A DNA stretch of 59,994 bases, filler included, from Sluysia triapertura (lineage: Eukaryota), in NCBI GenBank assembly GCA_046118255.1. It is 4 parts of 4 records of this genome, joined end to end, with 100 filler letters (N's around TTAATTAATTAA, not from the genome) between each part and the next. Parts side by side here need not be neighbours in the genome. Positions count along the whole stretch, not along the records: positions 1 to 19,754 come from JBJNIA010052112.1; 3 more parts are not named here. One strand, 5' to 3'. Under the pieces are notes generated by a model. It had not been told where the DNA came from. It made no database searches and saw only the letters and a list, made by a program, of their open reading frames with translations. Below are positions 7,391 to 19,754 of the stretch, piece after piece (positions within the stretch are counted from its first letter, which is position 1; each line of letters begins with the position of its first letter). Both the position numbers and the translations under genes were made by a program.

Positions 7391-7554
7391 NNNNNNNNNN
7401 NNNNNNNNNNNNNNNNNNNNNNNNNNNNNNNNNNNNNNNNNNNNNNNNNNNNNNNNNNNNNNNNNNNNNNNNNNNNNNNNNNNNNNNNNNNNNNNNNNNN
7501 NNNNNNNNNNNNNNNNNNNNNNNNNNNNNNNNNNNNNNNNNNNNNNNNNNNNNN
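7391..7554. other. Scaffold gap (164 N)
   Basis: Run of N. Confidence 0.99.
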
Positions 7555-8250: not shown

Positions 8251-10639
8251 TATAATAAATTATGAAAAGTACAACTTGAGATAAGTAATGAAGTTCGACA
8301 TGTTCGATTATTACAAGATGAACTTTACGGTAAACAGAAGGCATTGTGTCAATTAGCGTTTATCGAGAAAGATAATAAAATTCAGTAAATAAAGACAATG
8401 AATCAGATTACTATCGAGCTAGTGATGAAGTTTTAAACCAAGTGAATGCTTACACAGTAATTAAGTTTTATCATATCAAGAATGCTCTGAGATATGCGAA
8501 GAAAGGTGAAGTTATAAAAATGTATTATTTAATATTAATTAAGAAATGTTTTACTTGTTCTATTACAATGATAGGAGATAAAAGTCATTCTATCGTAATG
8601 ATGAAAACTTTTTATGTTAAAGAATTTATTATAAGTACCAAGAATTTTATTAATAAAACTATTGTTGTAACTAATAATACATTAATTACGAAATTTTATC
8701 ATTTAATTTTTGTGCGTTCAATATTAAGACAGATTAATGGGAGTAAAAGTTTTAATAAGATTATTATCTTAATCAATATTACACTTTATTTGAAATTTTA
8801 TTATTCAACCTTAAATGATGTTGTTAACATAGAAATTTATTTATCCATACATCACATGCATCTCAGGAAAAGCTTTAACAAGAATGATATTATTGCACTT
8901 TATAATACGATCATATCTCCGAATTCTCATCAACTCTTAGAGTATCATTTCTTTATAACAACACTATCGTTAACAAAACACATGAACTCTATTCAACATA
9001 TTTCATCAATTCATGTACATATAAATTCGTTGTTTGAAATTGTTAGAACCAATTCAACCGGGTGTTTATTCCTCGACCGGATTCGATCGAACTCATTGAT
9101 GATCATCATGACATTTCGAAAATTTCTATCCATAACTGTAAACGAAGATTCATTGTGTTTGTGTCAAATGCGAAATTTTGATTTTATATACTTCTATTTT
9201 AGTTGAATTTTATCTGTGTTTTAAGGTTTTATCATCAATATATTCAGAGATGACATTAAACCTTTTACTTATTCTCTGTCTTAAATTTCATATTAATAAA
9301 CGTCTTATATGTTATCCTTATTGTTTGATTTTAAATAAGAATTATTTTGATTTCAAAACTTACAACTTATATTTAAAGATCGCACAATTGTAATTTAAAA
9401 TGATAAATTATATTCTTCTTAGAATAATCTAAAAGATTTTGATACACTTTATTTGAAAAAACTCCCATCAAATAAATGTAAAGAATTTAATTACAATAAC
9501 ATTATGGTACCACTTAACTATCGATTAATCTTTTCTGTAAACGCTAATTGACAAGTCAAAAAAATACCGTTGAAGTACCATTAAAGTACCGATGAAAAAA
9601 TAACTTAGTATATTTTTTATAAGAATATTACACAAACATACCAAATTAAAGCAATAATTTTCATTTGGAAGACTAAAAGTTATTGACGAATTCAGATTGT
9701 TATTTCGAATCTATCTCGATAACTTACAAAAAATTTTTGAAGAACCAAAAATTCTTAGCAAATCCGAAAAATTTGTACGTAATTTTTAATTTTTTATATT
9801 ATAATTCATCTAATATCTATGTAAATATTGCGGACATTAAAAACTTTTAAAGATACTGTCAAGTTTTCTTGTACTTTAACTTTTATTACACGTATTTTAC
9901 GCATTACTGATGTCTAAAATAATACAGATACCATTAAAGTTTTTCATATTTTTCTAATAAAAATAAGATTTCTTTGTAATTTAATTTAAACATATTTAAT
10001 TTCTTTTATTTATTGTATCACGCAATCATTACACGTAGAATATAATACTTAACAGTAACGTTATGAGGGAAATGTAACGCATTTATTACATAGAGTATTG
10101 TTGTTTAATTGTCTTGTAAATGGTAGAAAACTAAAATATTTGATGATTAAAGCTAGTAATATAATTATAATATACTTTGGTATTATTTAGAAATAAGGTA
10201 TGTTTATATTTTAATACTTATGTATTCCCGTTTCATTTAATTAAATTTGTTTGCGATCATTGCATTGATTTAAAAAATATTCTCCGTAATGTAAATATTT
10301 TTTGTTGATTTTATATCGATTTAGTAATGTTAATCTCTTTAGTAATAATAATAGTAACAATAATAATAACTTCGGTAATTTTAAAATTAATTTTTATTGT
10401 ACCATTATATAATAATACATGTACAATTTGAGCACATTTAAAAATGCATGCATTGTGTAACAGTTTTATTATGTGATTTCAACCATCTACATTAATAAAT
10501 GAATTGTTTTGTATCGTTGATATTGCATAATGCGTAATAATAATGGGTGTACTCACAATTCTTGTATAAAAGTAAATTAAATTTGCATAACATTAATAAA
10601 TCAAAAATGACAAAACATACAAATTGTGATGAAACAGAG

Positions 10640-11503: not shown

Positions 11504-13084
11504 CAATGTTAAACAAGTGACATTTTTATAGACATTTTGAATTTAATGGAGAATCGACATTGCAATTCGTTAATGAACGTGAATTAGAGTAGTAAATGTC
11601 GACTAAGAAGAAAAACAGTTGTGTTTAACTAAATAATGATCATTTTTTATGAATTTTGTATAAAATTTGATATTTAAATGACTTATTTTTATTACTTCTT
11701 CGAAGAACCAGAACAGAACTGTTTTATTGTAAATATGACTTTTCCGGATCGTCTTTTTTCCAGCAGAGTAACAATAATCATCAATATTAAGTTTTGTGAA
11801 TAACTTCTTTTCATATAGGTACATTTGTTTGGCCACATCATATACATAGCTTTTAATAAAACTAAATTTTCCAAATTATCAATTTTTATTTGTCAAACTA
11901 CACAGTTAATTTAAACAATATTTTAATTTTAATCTTTGTACAAAGATGATAATTTTTCTAAGGTTCCTCCAATGAAATATGAAATGGCACTTATGTAAAC
12001 AATTCACTTTTCATGTGGAACAATATAGGGTCTGAATTTGGCCATTAATTTAGAGTTTATTTCTACTATTATTATTATTATTATTATTATTAGATTGTTA
12101 ATGTTATAATTATTATAATAATAATGATAATAATAATAATAATAATGTCGAAAACAACATATTGACAATTGTCAAAACATTAATACTCAACAATAATATA
12201 TAAGCATATATAAAATAAATAGTTTGATATAGAGGGCTTTGATTTTAGTGTATTAATACGTTTAAATGTTATGTTAGAATTTGATGTTACAAAAGTCTTT
12301 GAAGGTTTAACTCTACAAAACAGATGAATATATTGACAAATTTTAGACTTACTAATATTATAATTAAAATTTAATGATTTTGGTATTTTAATGTTGGACC
12401 GTAAGAGAATGAAGGTGTTTGGAACCTTATAGAATGTCAGTTTATATGGACTAATTATGTCATCGTTATTAAAAGACATTTCGTGTTGTGAAAATTTGAT
12501 TACAACTTCGTAATTGTCATCTTTAGGTCTTACTATATCAACGTTATGTTCAATTTCCCGAGTGGTATTATAAAAGTTTTGCTTATTATATAATTTAACA
12601 TGTTTCCGGGTTTCATTTTCGTTTATCTTATCGTCTTTCCCGATTATAATGTTACCGGATTTAACAGAGTTTTGTCTTTCATTATCATTGAATTTAACAT
12701 ATTTATTTATACTATAAAAAGAACAAAATTTAAAATGTTTAACAAAACTATTTATTAAAGTTCTAATTCTATATAAAAATAAATATATATTTGGTGAATT
12801 TACACGATTCGGCATCTCTTCGTTCCTGGATCTGTTTTCGTTGTTGAATAAACTAAATGTCCTACAATAGATAATATGAGAATAATTATTGTTAATAAAA
12901 ATGTAAATAAACTTTAATATTAATTTATTACTTTTAATGTCTTCAAATCTGCTGTACACAACCACTCCAAATGCATCACTCCACAGTTTCTTCGTCGAAT
13001 TGAATACGGATCTGCGACATGTTATCCGAGTACATTTGCCACTGTTTGAAATGATGTAGACTAGAAACTGCTCTTGTTCATGAT

Positions 13085-13789
13085 AGTTATCTTCGAAGTC
13101 TTGATTGTCTTCTTCCACTTCTTCATTAATCGATTCATCACTAATAACATCATCAGTAACATCATCTAAAATCTGGTAAACACTTTCTGGTTCATGAACC
13201 CATCCTCGAAATTTTCCATCTTCCCATTCTTTATTAAACTTTTCTTCAGCTTGTTTTCTCTGATCAACATTTTCAAATTCCATCATTGGTTTAGCACGAG
13301 CCATAAAATCATCCAAATATTCTGTTAACTTTAATAAATAATTATAGCATGCAACATTCTTCTTATCCTTAGGAAATTCATATAACTTATCAAATTTAGT
13401 TAAGTATGTAACATAATCAATATGCGGCACTTTTAGATTAATATATATTTGATAGCATTCATGCATATCTAAAAATCGACCATAACCTTCTTCATCAGTA
13501 AATTCGACAACTGGTGCACCAGCTTCTTCAACGTATTCGCGTAATTTTTCAAATTTATCATATTGTTTATGATACTCTTTAATTTGTGCCAATTGAGAAT
13601 AAAATTCTGTATATTCATTTGGTGGTGACATGGGAGTTATCTCTTTTTTACGTATAGACAACTTGTCTTCATAAGCATCATTTTCGCGTATTTTTTAAAC
13701 TCATCATACTCCAACGACATCAACGACATCAACGACATACTCTCATCGGGATTACGTTTATGATACTTTCTACATTCTTCAATACTCAT
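13085..13789 (-). pseudogene. SF3A3: Truncated, rearranged, intronless copy of splicing factor 3a subunit 3 (SF3a60/Prp9); the frame runs on into unrelated sequence to 12180
   Basis: DAYEDKLSIRKKEITPMSPPNEYTEFYSQLAQIKEYHK...VEFTDEEGYGRFLDMHECYQIYINLK...DYVTYLTKFDKLYEFPKDKKN...FNKEWEDGKFRGW matches recalled SF3A3 (PNEFAEFYNRLKQIKEFH, VEFTDEEGYGRYLDLHDCYLKYINLK, WENGTFPGW). The N-terminus, the middle region, [20 protein letters not shown] and the zinc finger are absent. Confidence 0.85.
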
Positions 13790-15129: not shown

Positions 15130-16130
15130 TTGTGAACTATAACTATAAGTATTAACACTAACAACGAAAACAATATCTGCGACATTTAATCCTCTACTAG
15201 TAAACTCATTAACAAACATAACACGTGAATCACCCGATTTGAAAAGGATAATGTTTTCTTATTGTTTTTGGCGGAGCATTCGTGGATTCGAGCATGCTGC
15301 CGAAATGACTTTAATATTCCTTTTATTTATAATGGGTTCATAATACCATATATCAGGATAATCTTTAACAAAGACTAAAACTGTAGATAGGTATGATTTA
15401 TTAGTATAATGCATTAATGTTTCACATAACATTCTAAAAGTATCTTGGTCTAAAGTATCATTTGGCATAGCCCAAGTAAAATGTTTCAACTGTGTTAGAA
15501 ACTTATTTTCTTATGCGGTATCAACAAATTGTAGATCATTTAACAAAAATCCGTACTTCTTTCCAACTTCATCATAACATGTTACTGAATAAATTTGTGT
15601 ATGTCTGAAAATCTTTATTTTTCTTATTGCTTTTATCGCATGTTTTTTGTGATGTAATTCGTAAAACTTTCTCAATGACTTCACCTAATTGATAACTGAT
15701 CATTTCATCTGCCCCGTCAATTACCAAATGTTGAATAGAATAAAAAATTTCTTTAATTTGATTAGTGTGATAAAGCATCATTAAAATTCGAATAGATGTT
15801 ACTATTAGGTGAACATGGGAAATCCTGAATTCCGTTAGTAGATCAGTCACATCTATTAAATGCATTGTCCTTAGATTTAATCCTTCACTAATTTCTATTA
15901 ATTCACCATGCTCTTGCATTGCTAATTCAAATGTGGAAATCAAAATCATTACATACATTAGTGGTTGATCGTTTTCTAACCATTGTTGAATAATTGGAAT
16001 ACGGTAGGAAACATTCTTGCCACTGCCGATTTCAGATAAACCAATATCATTGTTTCAGTAATAATGGTATAGGATGTTGTTGAAATTGAGCCGGCTTTAA
16101 CTATTTTAATTTAGAAATATTATCGAAGAG
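15130..16130 (-). pseudogene. Decayed DEAD-box RNA helicase, most like DDX47/Rrp3
   Basis: Degenerate motifs occur in the correct order: Q motif K*LKPAQFQQHPIPLLL; motif I DIGLSEIGSGKN; Ia LISTFELAMQ; II HLVIDGADEM; V FKSGDSRVMFVNEFTSRGLNVADIVFVVS. In-frame stops and frameshifts are present, motif VI is not recognisable and no introns are seen. Confidence 0.8.
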
Positions 16131-16269: not shown

Positions 16270-17591
16270 ACAAAAGATGAGAACAGTATTAGTAATTGCA
16301 ATTGGACAGCTAGTAAAATGTTGAGCTATCACAATGAGATAATGACGTTAATAAGATGAGAGAAAATGATTTTAAATGCATGCGACTGATGGCAAGTTAA
16401 ATAGTATGAAGTAAAAAAATGGTGAGGGTAGTAAGCAAAATTTTGCACTTAATAATAAATAATGTTGATTAATGATAATTATAATGAAAATTAGATGGTA
16501 ATGATTATAATGGAATAATAGTATAATGATAATGCAAAATGTGTAACATTGATAACTATAATAAAAATGACAATTAAAAATTTTCTTTTTATCACGAAAT
16601 TTTGATTTAATTTAATCTGCTTTCTTAACAAATTATTTATTTAATTAATATTAGTATTTTTAAAAGTTTAAGAAGCTAAATGTTGGGAGATTGTGAACTT
16701 GTGCTGTTTTAAATTGATGTTGTAAATTTTGAATGAAGGATTGATTATACATTAATGGTTTTGAATGTAATTGTGGTTTGAATGTTAACATATTATGTAT
16801 TAAGATGTTTTTAGCTATAAAATGATTTTGGTGAATCTGAACGAAATAAAATATAGCAACGGTTTTGATACCTTTTAAAAGTAATTTTATGCTTGTTTTG
16901 GATTGATTTGAAGGTGTCTATTTGTGATTTAGGATGTGATTGTGATGTTAGTGTTACGAGATAAAGGATAAATTTGTTTTAAGTAAATTTTTAAATGTAT
17001 TGGAAATTATAGAAAAATCTGTTAAGATAATATTTGAAGGAAGTGATCGATAGTAGAGTGTTTAGATAATGTTATTTTGATTGAGTGTTGAGGATTGTAA
17101 ACTTGAAATATTTTGATTGATAATTTTGGATGTAATTAAGTTTTGGGTGTTGACAGATTATTAATTTATATTTTTTGAGGTATCGAAAATGGTTTCAGTG
17201 GATATGAAAAAATAAAATATAAGAGAAAAAACTATTAATGGAAAATAGTTAGAATGTTATGGAATGGGATTTTATGTGAAGTATGTTGAATTAATTAAGT
17301 TTGCAATGTTTTGAATTAATTTTTAAGTATCTCCTCTTTGATGAATTTGATGTTATGTAATTTTATATTTGGAATGTTTGGAAATATTATGAATTATGAA
17401 ATGAGGATAAAGTTAGTTTGAGGAAAAAATAGTGAGGAATTGTTTTGTTATAGAGAATTATGAAGAGAGAATTGGACGGAGAATTATGATAGCGAATTTA
17501 GAGAATTTGAAGGTATTTCATAGAAATTTCATTTCATTTATTTGTTAATTAATTTATTGAATTCTAACACATTCAGTCATTTACGTGTAGT

Positions 17592-18011
17592 AGTTATTTA
17601 CTGTGTCGACACAGAGATTTCAAAAATCAATTTACCATCAAGATAATGAATTTGTAGAGAGACGAATATAAAGTTTGTGAAATCACCATCAGCGAGATGT
17701 TCTACGTTAATAAAGCCTCATCTCTAAAAATTAATCTTTGTTCTCGTCTCACAATTAATCTCGAATCAAAGATTGCTTTAGTTCAGTCATACATTAATCG
17801 GGAAATTATGCTGTTCATCGCTTATAAAGATAACAAATTCATCAGTGCTTCGAGCGAATTGCGCAGAGCTGATTTCGTTATTCAAGTTCTCGAGGGATCG
17901 GAGTTTAATCTCAAACAAACTAGGTCAAGCATGTCAGAAGATTGAATGCGGCTAAGGATACCTCGAAATGTTAGGTGATCACACTGAATCGTATATATAA
18001 AAACTTTGGAA
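17592..18011 (+). pseudogene. Inverted, intron-less partial copy of the adjacent PDZ gene
   Basis: About 95% identical by hand alignment to the reverse complement of 18346-18852. It lacks exactly 18417-18501 (junction ATGTCAGAAG|ATTGAATG at 17940/17941), has a 2-nt deletion near 17660 and lacks the PDZ-coding 5' part. Confidence 0.9.
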
Positions 18012-18411
18012 ACAGATAAAACATAACGGTATAAAACAATTAGTAAATTAATACAATTGCCATGTTTTATATAACACTTATATTTTAACATTTCATTCAT
18101 TATTATATAAAACTTTATAGCTAGTTTACCATTAAATGATGGCAATTTATTTATAGTCATTCTATGATCAAAACTTATCCCATTATGATGAAAACCTATA
18201 TATACCTGTTGATTAAATCTAATATTATTTTGATATCTCATATTAATAAAATATATTTTAATTTCAACGATAAATCTGTCTTTAATATAAAATTGACAAA
18301 GAAAAGAACAAAGAAAATTGACTATTTTCATAAAAATTATATTAATTCCAAAGTTTTTATATATACGATTCAGTGTGATCACCCAACATTTCGAGGTATC
18401 CGCAGCCGCAT

Positions 18412-19216
18412 TCAATCTAATAAAAACACAGTTATATGATAAGATACTTTTATAATTTATATAACAAGAAAATAGATATAAACTAAGAAGTATATATTTA
18501 CCTTCTGACATGCTTGACATAGTTTGTTTGAGATTAAACTCCGACCCCTCGAGAACTTGAATAACGAAATCAGCTCTGCGCAACTCGCTCGAAGCACTGG
18601 TGAATTTGTTATCTTTATAACCGATGAACAGCATAATTTCCCGATTAATGCATGACTGAACTAAAGCAATGTTTGACTCGAGATTAATTGTGAGGCGAGA
18701 ACAAAGATTAATTTTTAGAAATGAGACTTTATTAACGTCGAACATCTCGCTAATGGTGATTTCACAAACTTTATATTGATCTATCTCTACAAATTCATTA
18801 TCTTGATGGTAAATTGATTTTTGAAATCTCTGTGTCGACACAGTAAGTAACTTCACTTGTTCATTCATGAGATTATCTTTAGTTTCATCTGATTTGTTGG
18901 TCATTTCGATCTTTTTAAAACGTTTTATCATTAAATTAACTTCATCAACTAATAATAAATATTTTGCCACTCCGGTTAGAGTAATCAAACGAGTTCTGAT
19001 GCCATTTATTGATGTCAAAAATTCGCCTTTCTTTTCTAATTGAGCATTTGTTATTTCAGATATCATTATGTACGAAATCGATTGTAATCCACCTATTATT
19101 TTAAAACCATATTGCGAGCAACCCAATAAATCATGTTTTGGTTTAGATGTGTGGAGAGTAATACAAAAATCCTCTGAAATCATTTTGAAATTAAAAAGTG
19201 ATAGTTTATTTTTCAT
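18412..19216 (-). CDS. PDZ-domain protein, 239 aa (exon 1 19216-18502; intron 18501-18417; exon 2 18416-18412)
   Basis: FCITLH...YGFKIIGG..SISYIMISEI...LEKKGEFLTSINGIR...VAKYLL..DEVNLMIKR fits the PDZ pattern (G-F-x-I-x-GG; GD/E-x-I-xx-ING). The intron GTAAAT...TTTTATTAG is supported by its exact absence in the neighbouring copy. The spliced product ends MSED*. Confidence 0.7.
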
Positions 19217-19246
19217 TGTATGCCAACTCTAAAATTTTATTTGCTG

Positions 19247-19296
19247 CCCAATCAGAGTTTTCTAATTATAGTAAGTAATAATTAACTCTGATTGGG
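19247..19296. promoter_or_regulatory. Inverted pair of CCAAT boxes (13-bp perfect inverted repeat) upstream of the PDZ gene
   Basis: CCCAATCAGAGTT (19247-19259) and AACTCTGATTGGG (19284-19296), 30-80 nt 5' of the ATG at 19216. Confidence 0.5.
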
Positions 19297-19754
19297 TATA
19301 TCGATCATAGTAAAGCCAGCAGAATGTTGGTAAAAAGCAGCAAAACACCTGCCGTCATCAGTAATGTCATTGTAGTGACAGTTCTAATCAGTGTAAATAG
19401 TACTGATGACGGCGGTAACCAAATTAATGTAAATGATTGTTGTTAATTTGGTTAAATGATAATAATGAAAAATGGTAATAATAACAATACTAATAACAAT
19501 AATAGTATTGTTATTATTATTGTTGTTAATAAAAACGCATAAATGTCTTTAACTCTCACATGATCTTTTCTTTTTATCCTTTAAGCCTTCTAACATATTG
19601 ACCATGAAATAGAATGAGGAGAATCAGATGTACTGTGAAGGAGCAACAAAGATTAAGTGAAAGAAGTATCGTTTGTGGTTGTTGCTTCACAGTATGATAA
19701 TGAATCTCTTTAAAGTTATATAAATTTTATTTTGAAATTATATAATGATTAAAG

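What the first reader, a model, noticed from the sequence alone, without database searches (positions are those of the whole stretch)
17592..18852. Spliced, inverted copy of a gene sitting directly downstream of its parent: a potential self-targeting ~420-bp hairpin
Seen: 17592-18011 is the reverse complement of 18346-18852 (about 19 substitutions and one 2-nt deletion by hand), separated by a ~334-nt spacer. The left arm lacks exactly the 85-nt GT...AG intron (18501-18417) of the PDZ gene. Established: precise intron loss marks RNA-templated copies, and long inverted repeats in transcripts yield endo-siRNAs or ADAR substrates. Inference: a cDNA of the gene's own mRNA was pasted tail-to-tail beside the locus, by local retroposition or RNA-templated break repair; no poly(A) or TSD is visible. 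A spliced read-through transcript would pair without an intron bulge over the last ~115 codons and the 3' UTR, giving an autoregulatory hairpin or a convergent antisense pair. Alternatives are intron gain in the right arm or deletion through the shared AG microhomology.
Basis: partly seen in the sequence, partly recalled or inferred. Interest (0 to 1): 0.85.

Follow-up and report, generated by a model that had tools for sequence, protein, structure and literature searches.

The report
Inverted spliced fragment beside repeat copy
The inverted repeat is real, but the "gene" is one copy of a many-copy mobile reading frame, and the intron-less arm is a decayed RNA-derived fragment stuck onto the broken end of that copy, with no evidence that it regulates anything.

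Summary
17592-18011 is the reverse complement of 18346-18852, with 19 substitutions and a 2-nt deletion, and it lacks exactly an 85-nt GT..AG segment (18501-18417, minus strand).

The interpretation needs heavy revision.
- The "PDZ gene" has no significant PDZ match and no homolog in two very large protein libraries.
- It is one copy of a dispersed family in a 619-Mb, 25% GC genome. At least 21 contigs share one fixed 3' end followed by unrelated flanks.
- The same 5' repeat (about 2,100 first-look candidates) precedes related ORFs at other loci.
- The family's real product is a single ORF of about 510 codons that reads through the "intron" and the "spacer". Paralogs at 30-40% amino-acid identity keep this frame (dN/dS about 0.5-0.8). 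The 85 nt is therefore an exonic intron (exitron), and the spacer is coding, not UTR.
- A second copy, from another subfamily, lacks the same 85 nt. This supports real splicing and RNA-mediated copying.
- The right copy lacks the family's last 231 nt. It breaks at 18010, where the left arm begins, with 3 nt of microhomology.

Best reading: a spliced cDNA was captured at a break. Expression, small RNAs and independent read support for the junction are all missing.

The parts
17592..18011 (+). Left arm. An inverted partial copy of the family ORF (codons about 122-238 and 268-291 of the long frame). It lacks the 85-nt exitron, has a 2-nt frameshift deletion near 17660 and 19 private substitutions, and is non-coding debris.
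18346..18852 (-). Right arm. The matching part of the resident family copy, with the 85-nt segment present.
18417..18501 (-). 85-nt GT..AG segment inside the conserved ORF (exitron). When retained it keeps the long frame. When removed it shifts the frame to Asp plus TGA.
18012..18345 (-). It is in fact a coding continuation of the family ORF, stop-free and homologous in all paralogs, and it would form the hairpin loop.
18010..19216 (-). Resident (right) copy of the family ORF from its ATG to the breakpoint. The family's last 231 nt are missing.
18009..18012 (.). Inner junction. The family sequence (...CTGTTTC) meets the antisense of the arm (TTCCAAAG...), with 3 nt (TTC) of microhomology.
17882..18009 (-). 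The ORF of the right copy runs on for 43 codons through the antisense of the left arm to a stop at 17884-17882, giving a chimeric C-terminus.
19230..19754 (-). High-copy 5' repeat (R1). At other loci it precedes related ORFs, so it is the likely 5' region of the element. It is cut by the contig end.
16606..17403 (+). Unrelated high-copy repeat (R2) with a sharp end at 17403. The 188 nt at 17404-17591 between it and the left arm found no other copy among the scored matches.

Best explanation
The locus is a rearranged copy of a multi-copy, RNA-propagated element, not a host gene with a regulatory appendage.

The element consists of a high-copy 5' repeat, then one ORF of about 510 codons with no recognisable domain, then a fixed 3' end without poly(A). 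An 85-nt GT..AG segment inside the ORF is occasionally spliced out (an exitron).

In this window a resident copy (19754 down to 18010, minus strand) suffered a break about 231 nt before its normal 3' end. The 3' end of its sense strand paired through 3 nt (TTC) with a spliced sense transcript of the same copy or a very close sister. It was then extended by reverse transcription from element position 871 back to position 365, and joined to the other break end at 17591/17592.

This single event yields an inverted, intron-less, 5'- and 3'-truncated cDNA patch with no poly(A) or target duplication, fused tail-to-tail to the truncated parent.

Shown: the anatomy, the family, the coding status, the sister relationship, the truncation and the microhomology. 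Inferred: the break, the RNA template and the polymerase. Because the copy has lost its normal end, transcripts that read through would fold into a stem of about 420 bp. That could feed RNAi against the roughly 30 close family copies, but this is untested.
For: - Precise absence of an 85-nt GT..AG segment.
- The same loss occurs independently in C205580, which sits in another clade and carries a 48-nt insert that the arms lack.
- The segment is ancestral, since distant paralogs keep it in frame.
- Left and right are sisters: UFBoot 99, with shared derived states at 18772, 18765, 18605 and 18353.
- In at least 9 paralogs the sequence continues past the point equivalent to 18010 for 231 nt to a common end. 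The window has the left arm there instead.
- The fixed 3' end is followed by unrelated flanks in 21 contigs.
- 5'-truncated copies exist (C211145, C205580).
- The junction has 3 nt of microhomology.
- Strand logic: extending the sense-strand 3' end with antisense sequence needs a sense template, which a spliced mRNA provides.
- None of about 20 other copies has an adjacent inverted partner, so this is a one-off accident rather than a design feature.
Against: - No RNA data, so splicing and read-through are not observed.
- Branch lengths are very unequal: 19 substitutions plus an indel on the left arm and none on the right. Simple neutral divergence after one event does not predict this. It needs a mutagenic copying step (two tandem double substitutions hint at one), constraint on the right copy, or consensus-like assembly of the right arm.
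- In run X1, the only run with substantial coverage, the left-arm interior (17691-17987) has no unitig. At five spacer positions (18061, 18118, 18181, 18310, 18353) X1 reads only the allele that paralog C215953 carries. The junction is therefore not independently confirmed.
- The element encodes no reverse transcriptase, and no partner element was identified.
Confidence: 0.45

Rival explanations
1. Two separate insertions followed by a central deletion. A spliced, 5'-truncated family copy inserted tail-to-tail next to a sister copy, or the reverse order. The unstable palindrome centre was later deleted, removing the left copy's 3' part and the right copy's last 231 nt.
For: The family is mobile, with about 2 of 12 scorable copies intron-less. 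The region is packed with repeats. An older left copy would fit its much longer branch. A 3-nt microhomology also fits a deletion junction.
Against: It needs at least three events: insertion next to the closest relative, inverted orientation, then deletion. Being sister lineages implies equal time since the split, so an 'older' left copy does not actually explain the asymmetry. No other family copy shows a tail-to-tail pair.
Confidence: 0.22
2. DNA-level fold-back (snap-back) duplication at a break. It first copied the arm with the 85 nt, and the segment was later removed precisely by conversion with a spliced cDNA or by deletion between the two AG dinucleotides.
For: The tail-to-tail geometry with a 334-nt loop and a short microhomology is typical of fold-back inversions. 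Another deletion of about 85 nt without GT..AG ends exists in C205580, so deletions of that size do occur.
Against: It requires a second, exact event at splice-site boundaries. The identical loss in an unrelated copy argues for splicing rather than a 2-nt microhomology deletion.
Confidence: 0.08
3. The arrangement is not in the genome as drawn. It is either a chimeric contig joining a separate intron-less fragment to the repeat copy, or a rearrangement private to the sequenced individual or sample.
For: The assembly is very fragmented (263,945 contigs). Run X1 has no unitig for 17691-17987, and at five spacer positions it reads only the allele that paralog C215953 carries.
Against: The two sides share only 3 nt at the junction, far too little for a k-mer assembler to join them. 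The arms differ by about 5%, so this is not a simple strand-turnaround artefact. X1 holds only 46% of the sampled words and may be another strain, and the tool warns that holes in contig runs prove nothing.
Confidence: 0.12
4. A selected hairpin-RNA locus. The inverted repeat is maintained because its transcript yields small RNAs that silence the parent copy or the whole family, as Nmy does for Dox in Drosophila simulans or Mu killer does for MuDR in maize.
For: A 420-bp stem at about 95% pairing is predicted. The right copy has lost its normal end, so read-through into the left arm is plausible. About 30 copies at 80-97% identity would be targets. Nmy is a retroposed, intron-less inverted repeat of 345-380 bp (PMC2062475).
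Against: There is no RNA or small-RNA evidence. The left arm is decaying fast and asymmetrically, with no sign that pairing is being preserved. It is a single occurrence and is not seen in run X1.
Confidence: 0.1

Closest known systems
Endonuclease-independent retro-insertion, or cDNA capture at chromosomal double-strand breaks (known from yeast Ty1 cDNA capture and human LINE-1; cited from my own knowledge, not checked here)
   Same: The insert is a piece of spliced cDNA truncated at both ends. It has no poly(A) and no target-site duplication, target DNA was lost (231 nt or more), and the junction has short microhomology.
   Different: Here the template appears to be the transcript of the broken copy itself or its sister. 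This makes a tail-to-tail hairpin with its parent. The polymerase and the break are inferred, not observed.
Spliced integrated retrotransposed elements (SpIREs of LINE-1) and intron-bearing Penelope-like elements (from my own knowledge)
   Same: A mobile family in which most copies keep an internal GT..AG segment and a minority lack it exactly. This shows that spliced RNAs are sometimes copied back into DNA.
   Different: This family encodes no recognisable reverse transcriptase or endonuclease. No hammerhead or other Rfam motif was found.
Hairpin-RNA suppressor loci derived from their targets: Nmy/Dox in Drosophila simulans (PMC2062475, PMC10292708) and Mu killer in maize (from my own knowledge)
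   Same: An inverted repeat of a few hundred bp derived from the target sequence. In Nmy it arose through an intron-less retrocopy.
   Different: Those loci have demonstrated transcripts, small RNAs and genetic effects. Here nothing beyond the sequence is known, one arm is part of the parent copy itself, and the arms are diverging.
Exitrons (exonic introns)
   Same: A GT..AG segment lying inside a protein-coding exon. Retention is the coding-competent form, and removal alters the product.
   Different: Splicing is inferred only from two genomic copies lacking the segment. Its length is not a multiple of three, so removal truncates the protein after two codons.
LINE-1 twin priming (5' inversion)
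   Same: One insertion event that leaves part of a retro-element inverted.
   Different: Twin priming joins the two pieces head-to-head, with the 3' end and poly(A) at the outside. This junction is tail-to-tail, with the 3' tail missing.

Membership tests
Spliceosomal intron (the 85-nt segment) | GT..AG ends with a donor-like and a pyrimidine-rich acceptor context | tested here: met
   AAG|GTAAAT ... TTTTTATTAG|A on the minus strand, 18501-18417.
Spliceosomal intron (the 85-nt segment) | Exact removal seen in RNA or in RNA-derived copies | tested here: met
   The left arm and C205580 both read ...TCAGAAG|ATTGAATG.... They lie in different clades. No RNA-seq was available.
Spliceosomal intron (the 85-nt segment) | Non-coding, interrupting the reading frame | tested here: not met
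   The segment is in frame and stop-free. Its translation is conserved (EG.FI...YKF...NY.FIR) in paralogs at 30-40% amino-acid identity. It is better described as an exitron.
Processed retrocopy made by target-primed reverse transcription | Poly(A) tail and target-site duplication | tested here: not met
   The left arm ends at ...CTTTGGAA|ACAGAT with no A run, and no duplicated flanks are visible.
Processed retrocopy made by target-primed reverse transcription | Loss of introns relative to the parent | tested here: met
cDNA capture / endonuclease-independent insertion at a break | cDNA truncated at both ends, loss of target DNA, microhomology, no target-site duplication | tested here: met
   The arm spans element positions 365-871 only. 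The resident copy lacks its last 231 nt. TTC is shared at the inner junction. The outer junction could not be analysed because no empty site is available.
Twin-priming inversion | Head-to-head junction with an intact 3' end at the outside | tested here: not met
   The junction joins position 871 of one piece to position 1207 of the other (tail-to-tail), and the 3' tail is absent.
Mobile (retroposon-like) repeat family | Common terminus followed by unrelated flanks in many places | tested here: met
   21 contigs end the homology at ...ACACCAAA and then diverge.
Mobile (retroposon-like) repeat family | Own reverse transcriptase, transposase or terminal repeats | tested here: not met
   No Pfam domain in any of 21 ORFs. 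No terminal inverted repeats. The tail motif is not shared with a larger family. No Rfam hit.
PDZ-domain protein | Significant match to PDZ profiles or a PDZ fold | tested here: inconclusive
   No Pfam hit at E<=0.1. PDB PDZ chains score only E 1.1-1.9, beside KH domains at E 0.7. The AlphaFold model has mean pLDDT 32.7 and is unusable.
Hairpin-RNA / endo-siRNA locus | Long inverted repeat able to form dsRNA | tested here: met
   Predicted stem of about 420 bp, MFE -749 kcal/mol.
Hairpin-RNA / endo-siRNA locus | One transcript spanning both arms, and small RNAs from them | not testable with these tools
   No RNA run holds the stretch. Only short DNA unitigs were available.

The most novel reading that the evidence does not exclude
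This would be a natural footprint of break repair templated by the broken locus's own spliced transcript. The repair turned a mobile-element copy into a hairpin gene against its own family in one step. The excess of substitutions in the new arm, including two tandem double changes, would record the error-prone polymerase that copied the RNA.
Probability: 0.2. Interest if true: 0.6.

Novelty: new member of a known kind. Interest (0 to 1): 0.3.

Why it matters
If the cDNA-capture reading is right, the locus is a clean natural example of RNA-templated repair leaving an inverted, spliced patch beside its source. It also shows how hairpin loci against repeats can arise in a single accident.

More practically, it is a warning for annotation. 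In this AT-rich genome, what looks like a small spliced gene with a UTR is the front part of a fast-evolving ORF of about 510 codons that belongs to an abundant, unclassified repeat. That family and its high-copy 5' repeat may deserve description in their own right: no homolog in 1.8 billion representative proteins, a fixed 3' end, and occasional spliced copies.

Tried and rejected
**Searches that found nothing**
- Protein homology for the 238-aa product: no hit among 5.8 billion proteins.
- Protein homology for the 532-aa ORF of C188749: no hit among 1.84 billion representatives.
- Pfam on 21 ORFs: nothing credible.
- Rfam on the window and five loci: nothing.
- AlphaFold on the 532-aa ORF with a 16-row alignment: mean pLDDT 32.7. 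No fold search was run because it would be meaningless.
- Terminal inverted repeats in C188749: none.
- Whether the 3' tail or its last 22 nt is shared with a larger element: no (27 copies; pattern no commoner than its control).

**Readings rejected**
- Intron gain in the right arm: distant paralogs carry the segment.
- Twin priming: wrong geometry.
- A second 'intron' in C205580's other deletion of about 85 nt: its ends are not GT..AG.
- An ADAR-like signature in the left arm: changes are 6 G>A, 3 C>T, 4 T>C, 0 A>G and 6 transversions, read on the gene's sense (minus) strand. This looks like ordinary AT-biased decay.
- C215953 as the unrearranged allele: it is the closest paralog (97.2%), but its downstream flank does not match the window.

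**Steps that could not be completed**
- Taxonomy: the SF3A3-like piece hits annelid, cestode and monogenean proteins at only 42-46% and is itself a multicopy fragment. No species is named. A guess at a monogenean was dropped because published monogenean GC values are 31-38% (PMC10308649).
- The search of earlier findings was not open.
The spliced product was read from the left arm and from C205580 instead.

Full report
**1.

The repeat finder gives three collinear inverted blocks:
- 17592-17660 / 18784-18852 (99%)
- 17656-17940 / 18502-18786 (94%)
- 17939-18011 / 18346-18418 (96%)

The alignment and the family alignment show 19 substitutions and one 2-nt deletion. The left arm lacks exactly 18501..18417 of the minus strand: 85 nt, starting GTAAAT and ending TTTTTATTAG. 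Folded as one strand, the region gives the expected long hairpin with an 85-nt bulge (-749 kcal/mol). There is no poly(A) and no visible target duplication.

**2. The 'gene' is a copy of a dispersed repeat**

The window is contig C52112 of a 619-Mb assembly in 263,945 contigs, at about 25% GC. The left arm alone finds 37 matches in the genome, and the 238-aa product finds 44.

In the paralogs, homology to the right copy runs from at least 19754 through the exon, the 85 nt and the whole 'spacer' down to 18010. It then continues for another 231 nt to one common end...ACACCAAA. After that end every copy has a different flank. This holds in 21 contigs.

Upstream, 19230-19754 belongs to a repeat with about 2,100 first-look candidates. 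At other loci that repeat sits just upstream of ORFs that are distant relatives of this one.

Many copies carry frameshifts and stops. At least two are 5'-truncated but keep the fixed 3' end (C211145, C205580).

The family has no Pfam domain and no homolog in 5.8 billion or 1.84 billion-representative protein sets. It has no terminal inverted repeats, no Rfam motif, and a tail not shared with any larger family. I therefore call it an unclassified, retroposon-like element that encodes a single ORF.

The surroundings fit this picture:
- 16606-17403 is another repeat with about 2,800 candidates.
- The SF3A3-like ORF at 12180-13694 is a fragment covering only residues about 60-240 of SF3A3 and is itself multicopy, with 380 candidates.
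- The DEAD-box-like ORF at 15572-16054 has degenerate motifs.

**3. The gene model changes**

From the ATG at 19216 the frame stays open for 444 codons (448 from stop to stop). It runs through the 85 nt, the 'UTR', the 'spacer', and even 43 codons into the antisense of the left arm. Block shuffles of the window never exceed 204 codons.

The same frame is open in every paralog, switching only at obvious frameshift indels, while the other five frames carry the usual one stop per 10 codons or so. In C188749 it runs 532 codons, right through the fixed end of the element.

Members at only 30-40% amino-acid identity (C193972, C190216, C48387, C65066, C223723, C65463) align along the whole length. 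This includes the codons of the 85-nt segment, with the motif EG.FI...YKF...NY.FIR. Pairwise dN/dS is 0.45-0.85 in 13 of 14 comparisons.

So the family's product is a fast-evolving protein of about 510 aa. The 85 nt is an intron-like segment inside coding sequence (an exitron). The 334-nt 'spacer' is coding. Removing the 85 nt (not a multiple of three) gives Asp plus TGA, as read in the left arm's own ORF.

The PDZ label is unsupported. There is no Pfam hit. PDB PDZ chains score E 1.1-1.9, beside KH domains at E 0.7. The structure model is unusable, with pLDDT 32.7.

**4. Is the 85 nt really spliced?**

No RNA run holds the region. The genomic evidence is good, however. A second copy, C205580, reads exactly the same junction (...TCAGAAG|ATTGAATG...). 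It belongs to a different, well-supported clade and carries a 48-nt in-frame insert that both arms lack. Two identical losses at GT..AG boundaries are hard to explain by a 2-nt microhomology deletion.

Because distant paralogs have the segment, absence is the derived state, and intron gain is excluded.

C205580 is also 5'-truncated and keeps the fixed 3' end. This is what a retroposed spliced RNA would look like. Its other deletion of about 85 nt has no GT..AG ends.

**5. How the two arms are related**

A maximum-likelihood tree of the arm region puts left and right together (UFBoot 99). They share four derived states found in no other sampled copy: 18772, 18765, 18605 and 18353. The next closest sequence to the left arm is 89% identical.

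The divergence is entirely one-sided. At 18 of the 19 differing sites the right arm has the family's commonest state. Its terminal branch is zero, while the left arm's is 0.047.

The left-arm changes are 13 transitions and 6 transversions (6 G>A, 3 C>T, 4 T>C, no A>G, read on the gene's sense (minus) strand). They include two tandem double substitutions, plus the 2-nt deletion.

Equal neutral decay after a duplication does not predict this. Possible causes are:
- a mutagenic copying step;
- constraint on the still-open right copy, although family-wide constraint is weak;
- a consensus-like assembly of the right arm.

I could not decide between them.

**6. The junction**

In gene orientation the paralogs read ...TTATCTGTTTC|GACGCC..., whereas the window reads ...TTATCTGTTTC|CAAAGTTTTT.... 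The second part is the antisense of the arm, whose parental context is ...AATTC|CAAAG. Three letters (TTC) are therefore shared.

The resident copy stops at element position 1207 of about 1438. It is continued by the antisense of positions 871 back to 365, without the exitron. The join is tail-to-tail. This excludes twin priming, which is head-to-head with the 3' end outside.

Extending the 3' end of the sense strand with antisense sequence needs a sense template. That template could be the same DNA strand folded back, which would carry the 85 nt, or a sense RNA, which can be spliced.

One event explains all features: a break in the 3' part of the copy, priming on a spliced transcript of that copy or its sister by microhomology, reverse transcription for about 420 nt, and end joining at 17591/17592. 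The features explained are inversion, splicing, truncation at both ends, no poly(A), no target duplication, and loss of the tail.

The main rival needs more steps: two tail-to-tail insertions followed by a central deletion. A DNA fold-back needs a later exact excision.

**7. Independent support is lacking**

Only three runs hold parts of the stretch, all as short unitigs.
- In the best run (X1, 46% of sampled words), the right-arm exon is matched exactly, including the exon/85-nt boundary (18438-18571 without a difference).
- In the same run, 17691-17987 has no depth at all.
- At five spacer positions (18061, 18118, 18181, 18310, 18353) X1 reads only the variant base, and that base is the one paralog C215953 carries.

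X1 may be another isolate, and the tool warns that holes prove nothing. Still, the rearrangement is unconfirmed outside this contig.

A k-mer assembler would not join sequences that share 3 nt. The arms differ by about 5%, so a trivial turnaround artefact is unlikely.

**8. Function**

None of about 20 other copies has an inverted partner, and the left arm is decaying. I therefore see no sign of a selected device.

Because the copy lost its normal end, read-through transcripts would form a stem of about 420 bp. Such hairpins are known to silence their source families. Nmy is a retroposed, intron-less inverted repeat of 345-380 bp that suppresses Dox (PMC2062475; PMC10292708). Mu killer in maize is a comparable case (from my own knowledge). 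That remains a hypothesis for RNA and small-RNA sequencing.

**9. Verdict**

- RNA origin of the left arm: likely.
- Host PDZ gene with UTR and an autoregulatory hairpin: not supported.

This is a one-off rearrangement of a repeat copy, belonging to known kinds (cDNA capture at breaks, spliced retro-copies, repeat-derived hairpins). Interest is modest. The orphan ORF family itself is the more unusual item: no stop inside the element, an exitron, and thousands of related 5' repeats.

Noticed in passing
window 12180-13694 (-): A 504-codon open frame. Its first ~200 residues are SF3A3-like (Pfam PF16837, PF12108), but only residues about 60-240 of SF3A3 are present. The rest is AT-rich sequence with no stop. 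The whole stretch is multicopy in the genome (380 first-look candidates at 73-91% identity).
   Followed up: partly
window 19230-19754 and loci L052, L056, L059, L060: A high-copy repeat of about 1.1 kb (2,127 first-look candidates). It ends 20-160 nt upstream of long ORFs that are distant relatives of one another, so it is the likely 5' region of a very abundant, unclassified element superfamily.
   Followed up: partly
family-wide (L044:742-2337, L029, L030, L042, L043): The element's ORF has no stop codon inside the element. The frame is open to the fixed 3' end, and the stop is supplied by whatever flank follows (for example ...CCA AAG TAA, or ...CCA AAA TCA TGA).
   Followed up: partly
window 16606-17403: Another high-copy repeat (2,828 first-look candidates) with a sharp end at 17403. 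The GA-rich 188 nt at 17404-17591 next to the left arm found no other copy among the scored matches.
   Followed up: no
window 15572-16054 (-): A DEAD-box-helicase-like open frame (PF00270, E 1.7e-13) with degenerate motifs (GSGKN in place of GSGKT, DGAD in place of DEAD). It is probably a pseudogene or retrocopy.
   Followed up: no
window 8379-9206 (+): A 275-codon open frame of AT-rich sequence, longer than any of 200 shuffles gave (maximum 204). It has no Pfam hit and no similarity to the family studied here.
   Followed up: partly
window 18794 (insert position); L045, L048, L039, L049: A 48-nt in-frame segment (16 codons, GIIIVFKEYASKNSIQ) is present in one subfamily and absent from the window's subfamily. 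Its ends are not GT..AG.
   Followed up: partly
L063 (C215953:1-653): The closest paralog of the right copy: 97.2% identity over 18430-18009, with the 231-nt tail intact. The contig starts inside the 85-nt segment, which suggests the assembler broke at a near-identical exon shared with this window.
   Followed up: partly
window 19465-19531: An imperfect palindromic AAT/ATT-type microsatellite inside the 5' repeat, with very high unitig depth in all three runs.
   Followed up: no
window 7391-7554: A run of 164 N (assembly gap or masked).
   Followed up: no
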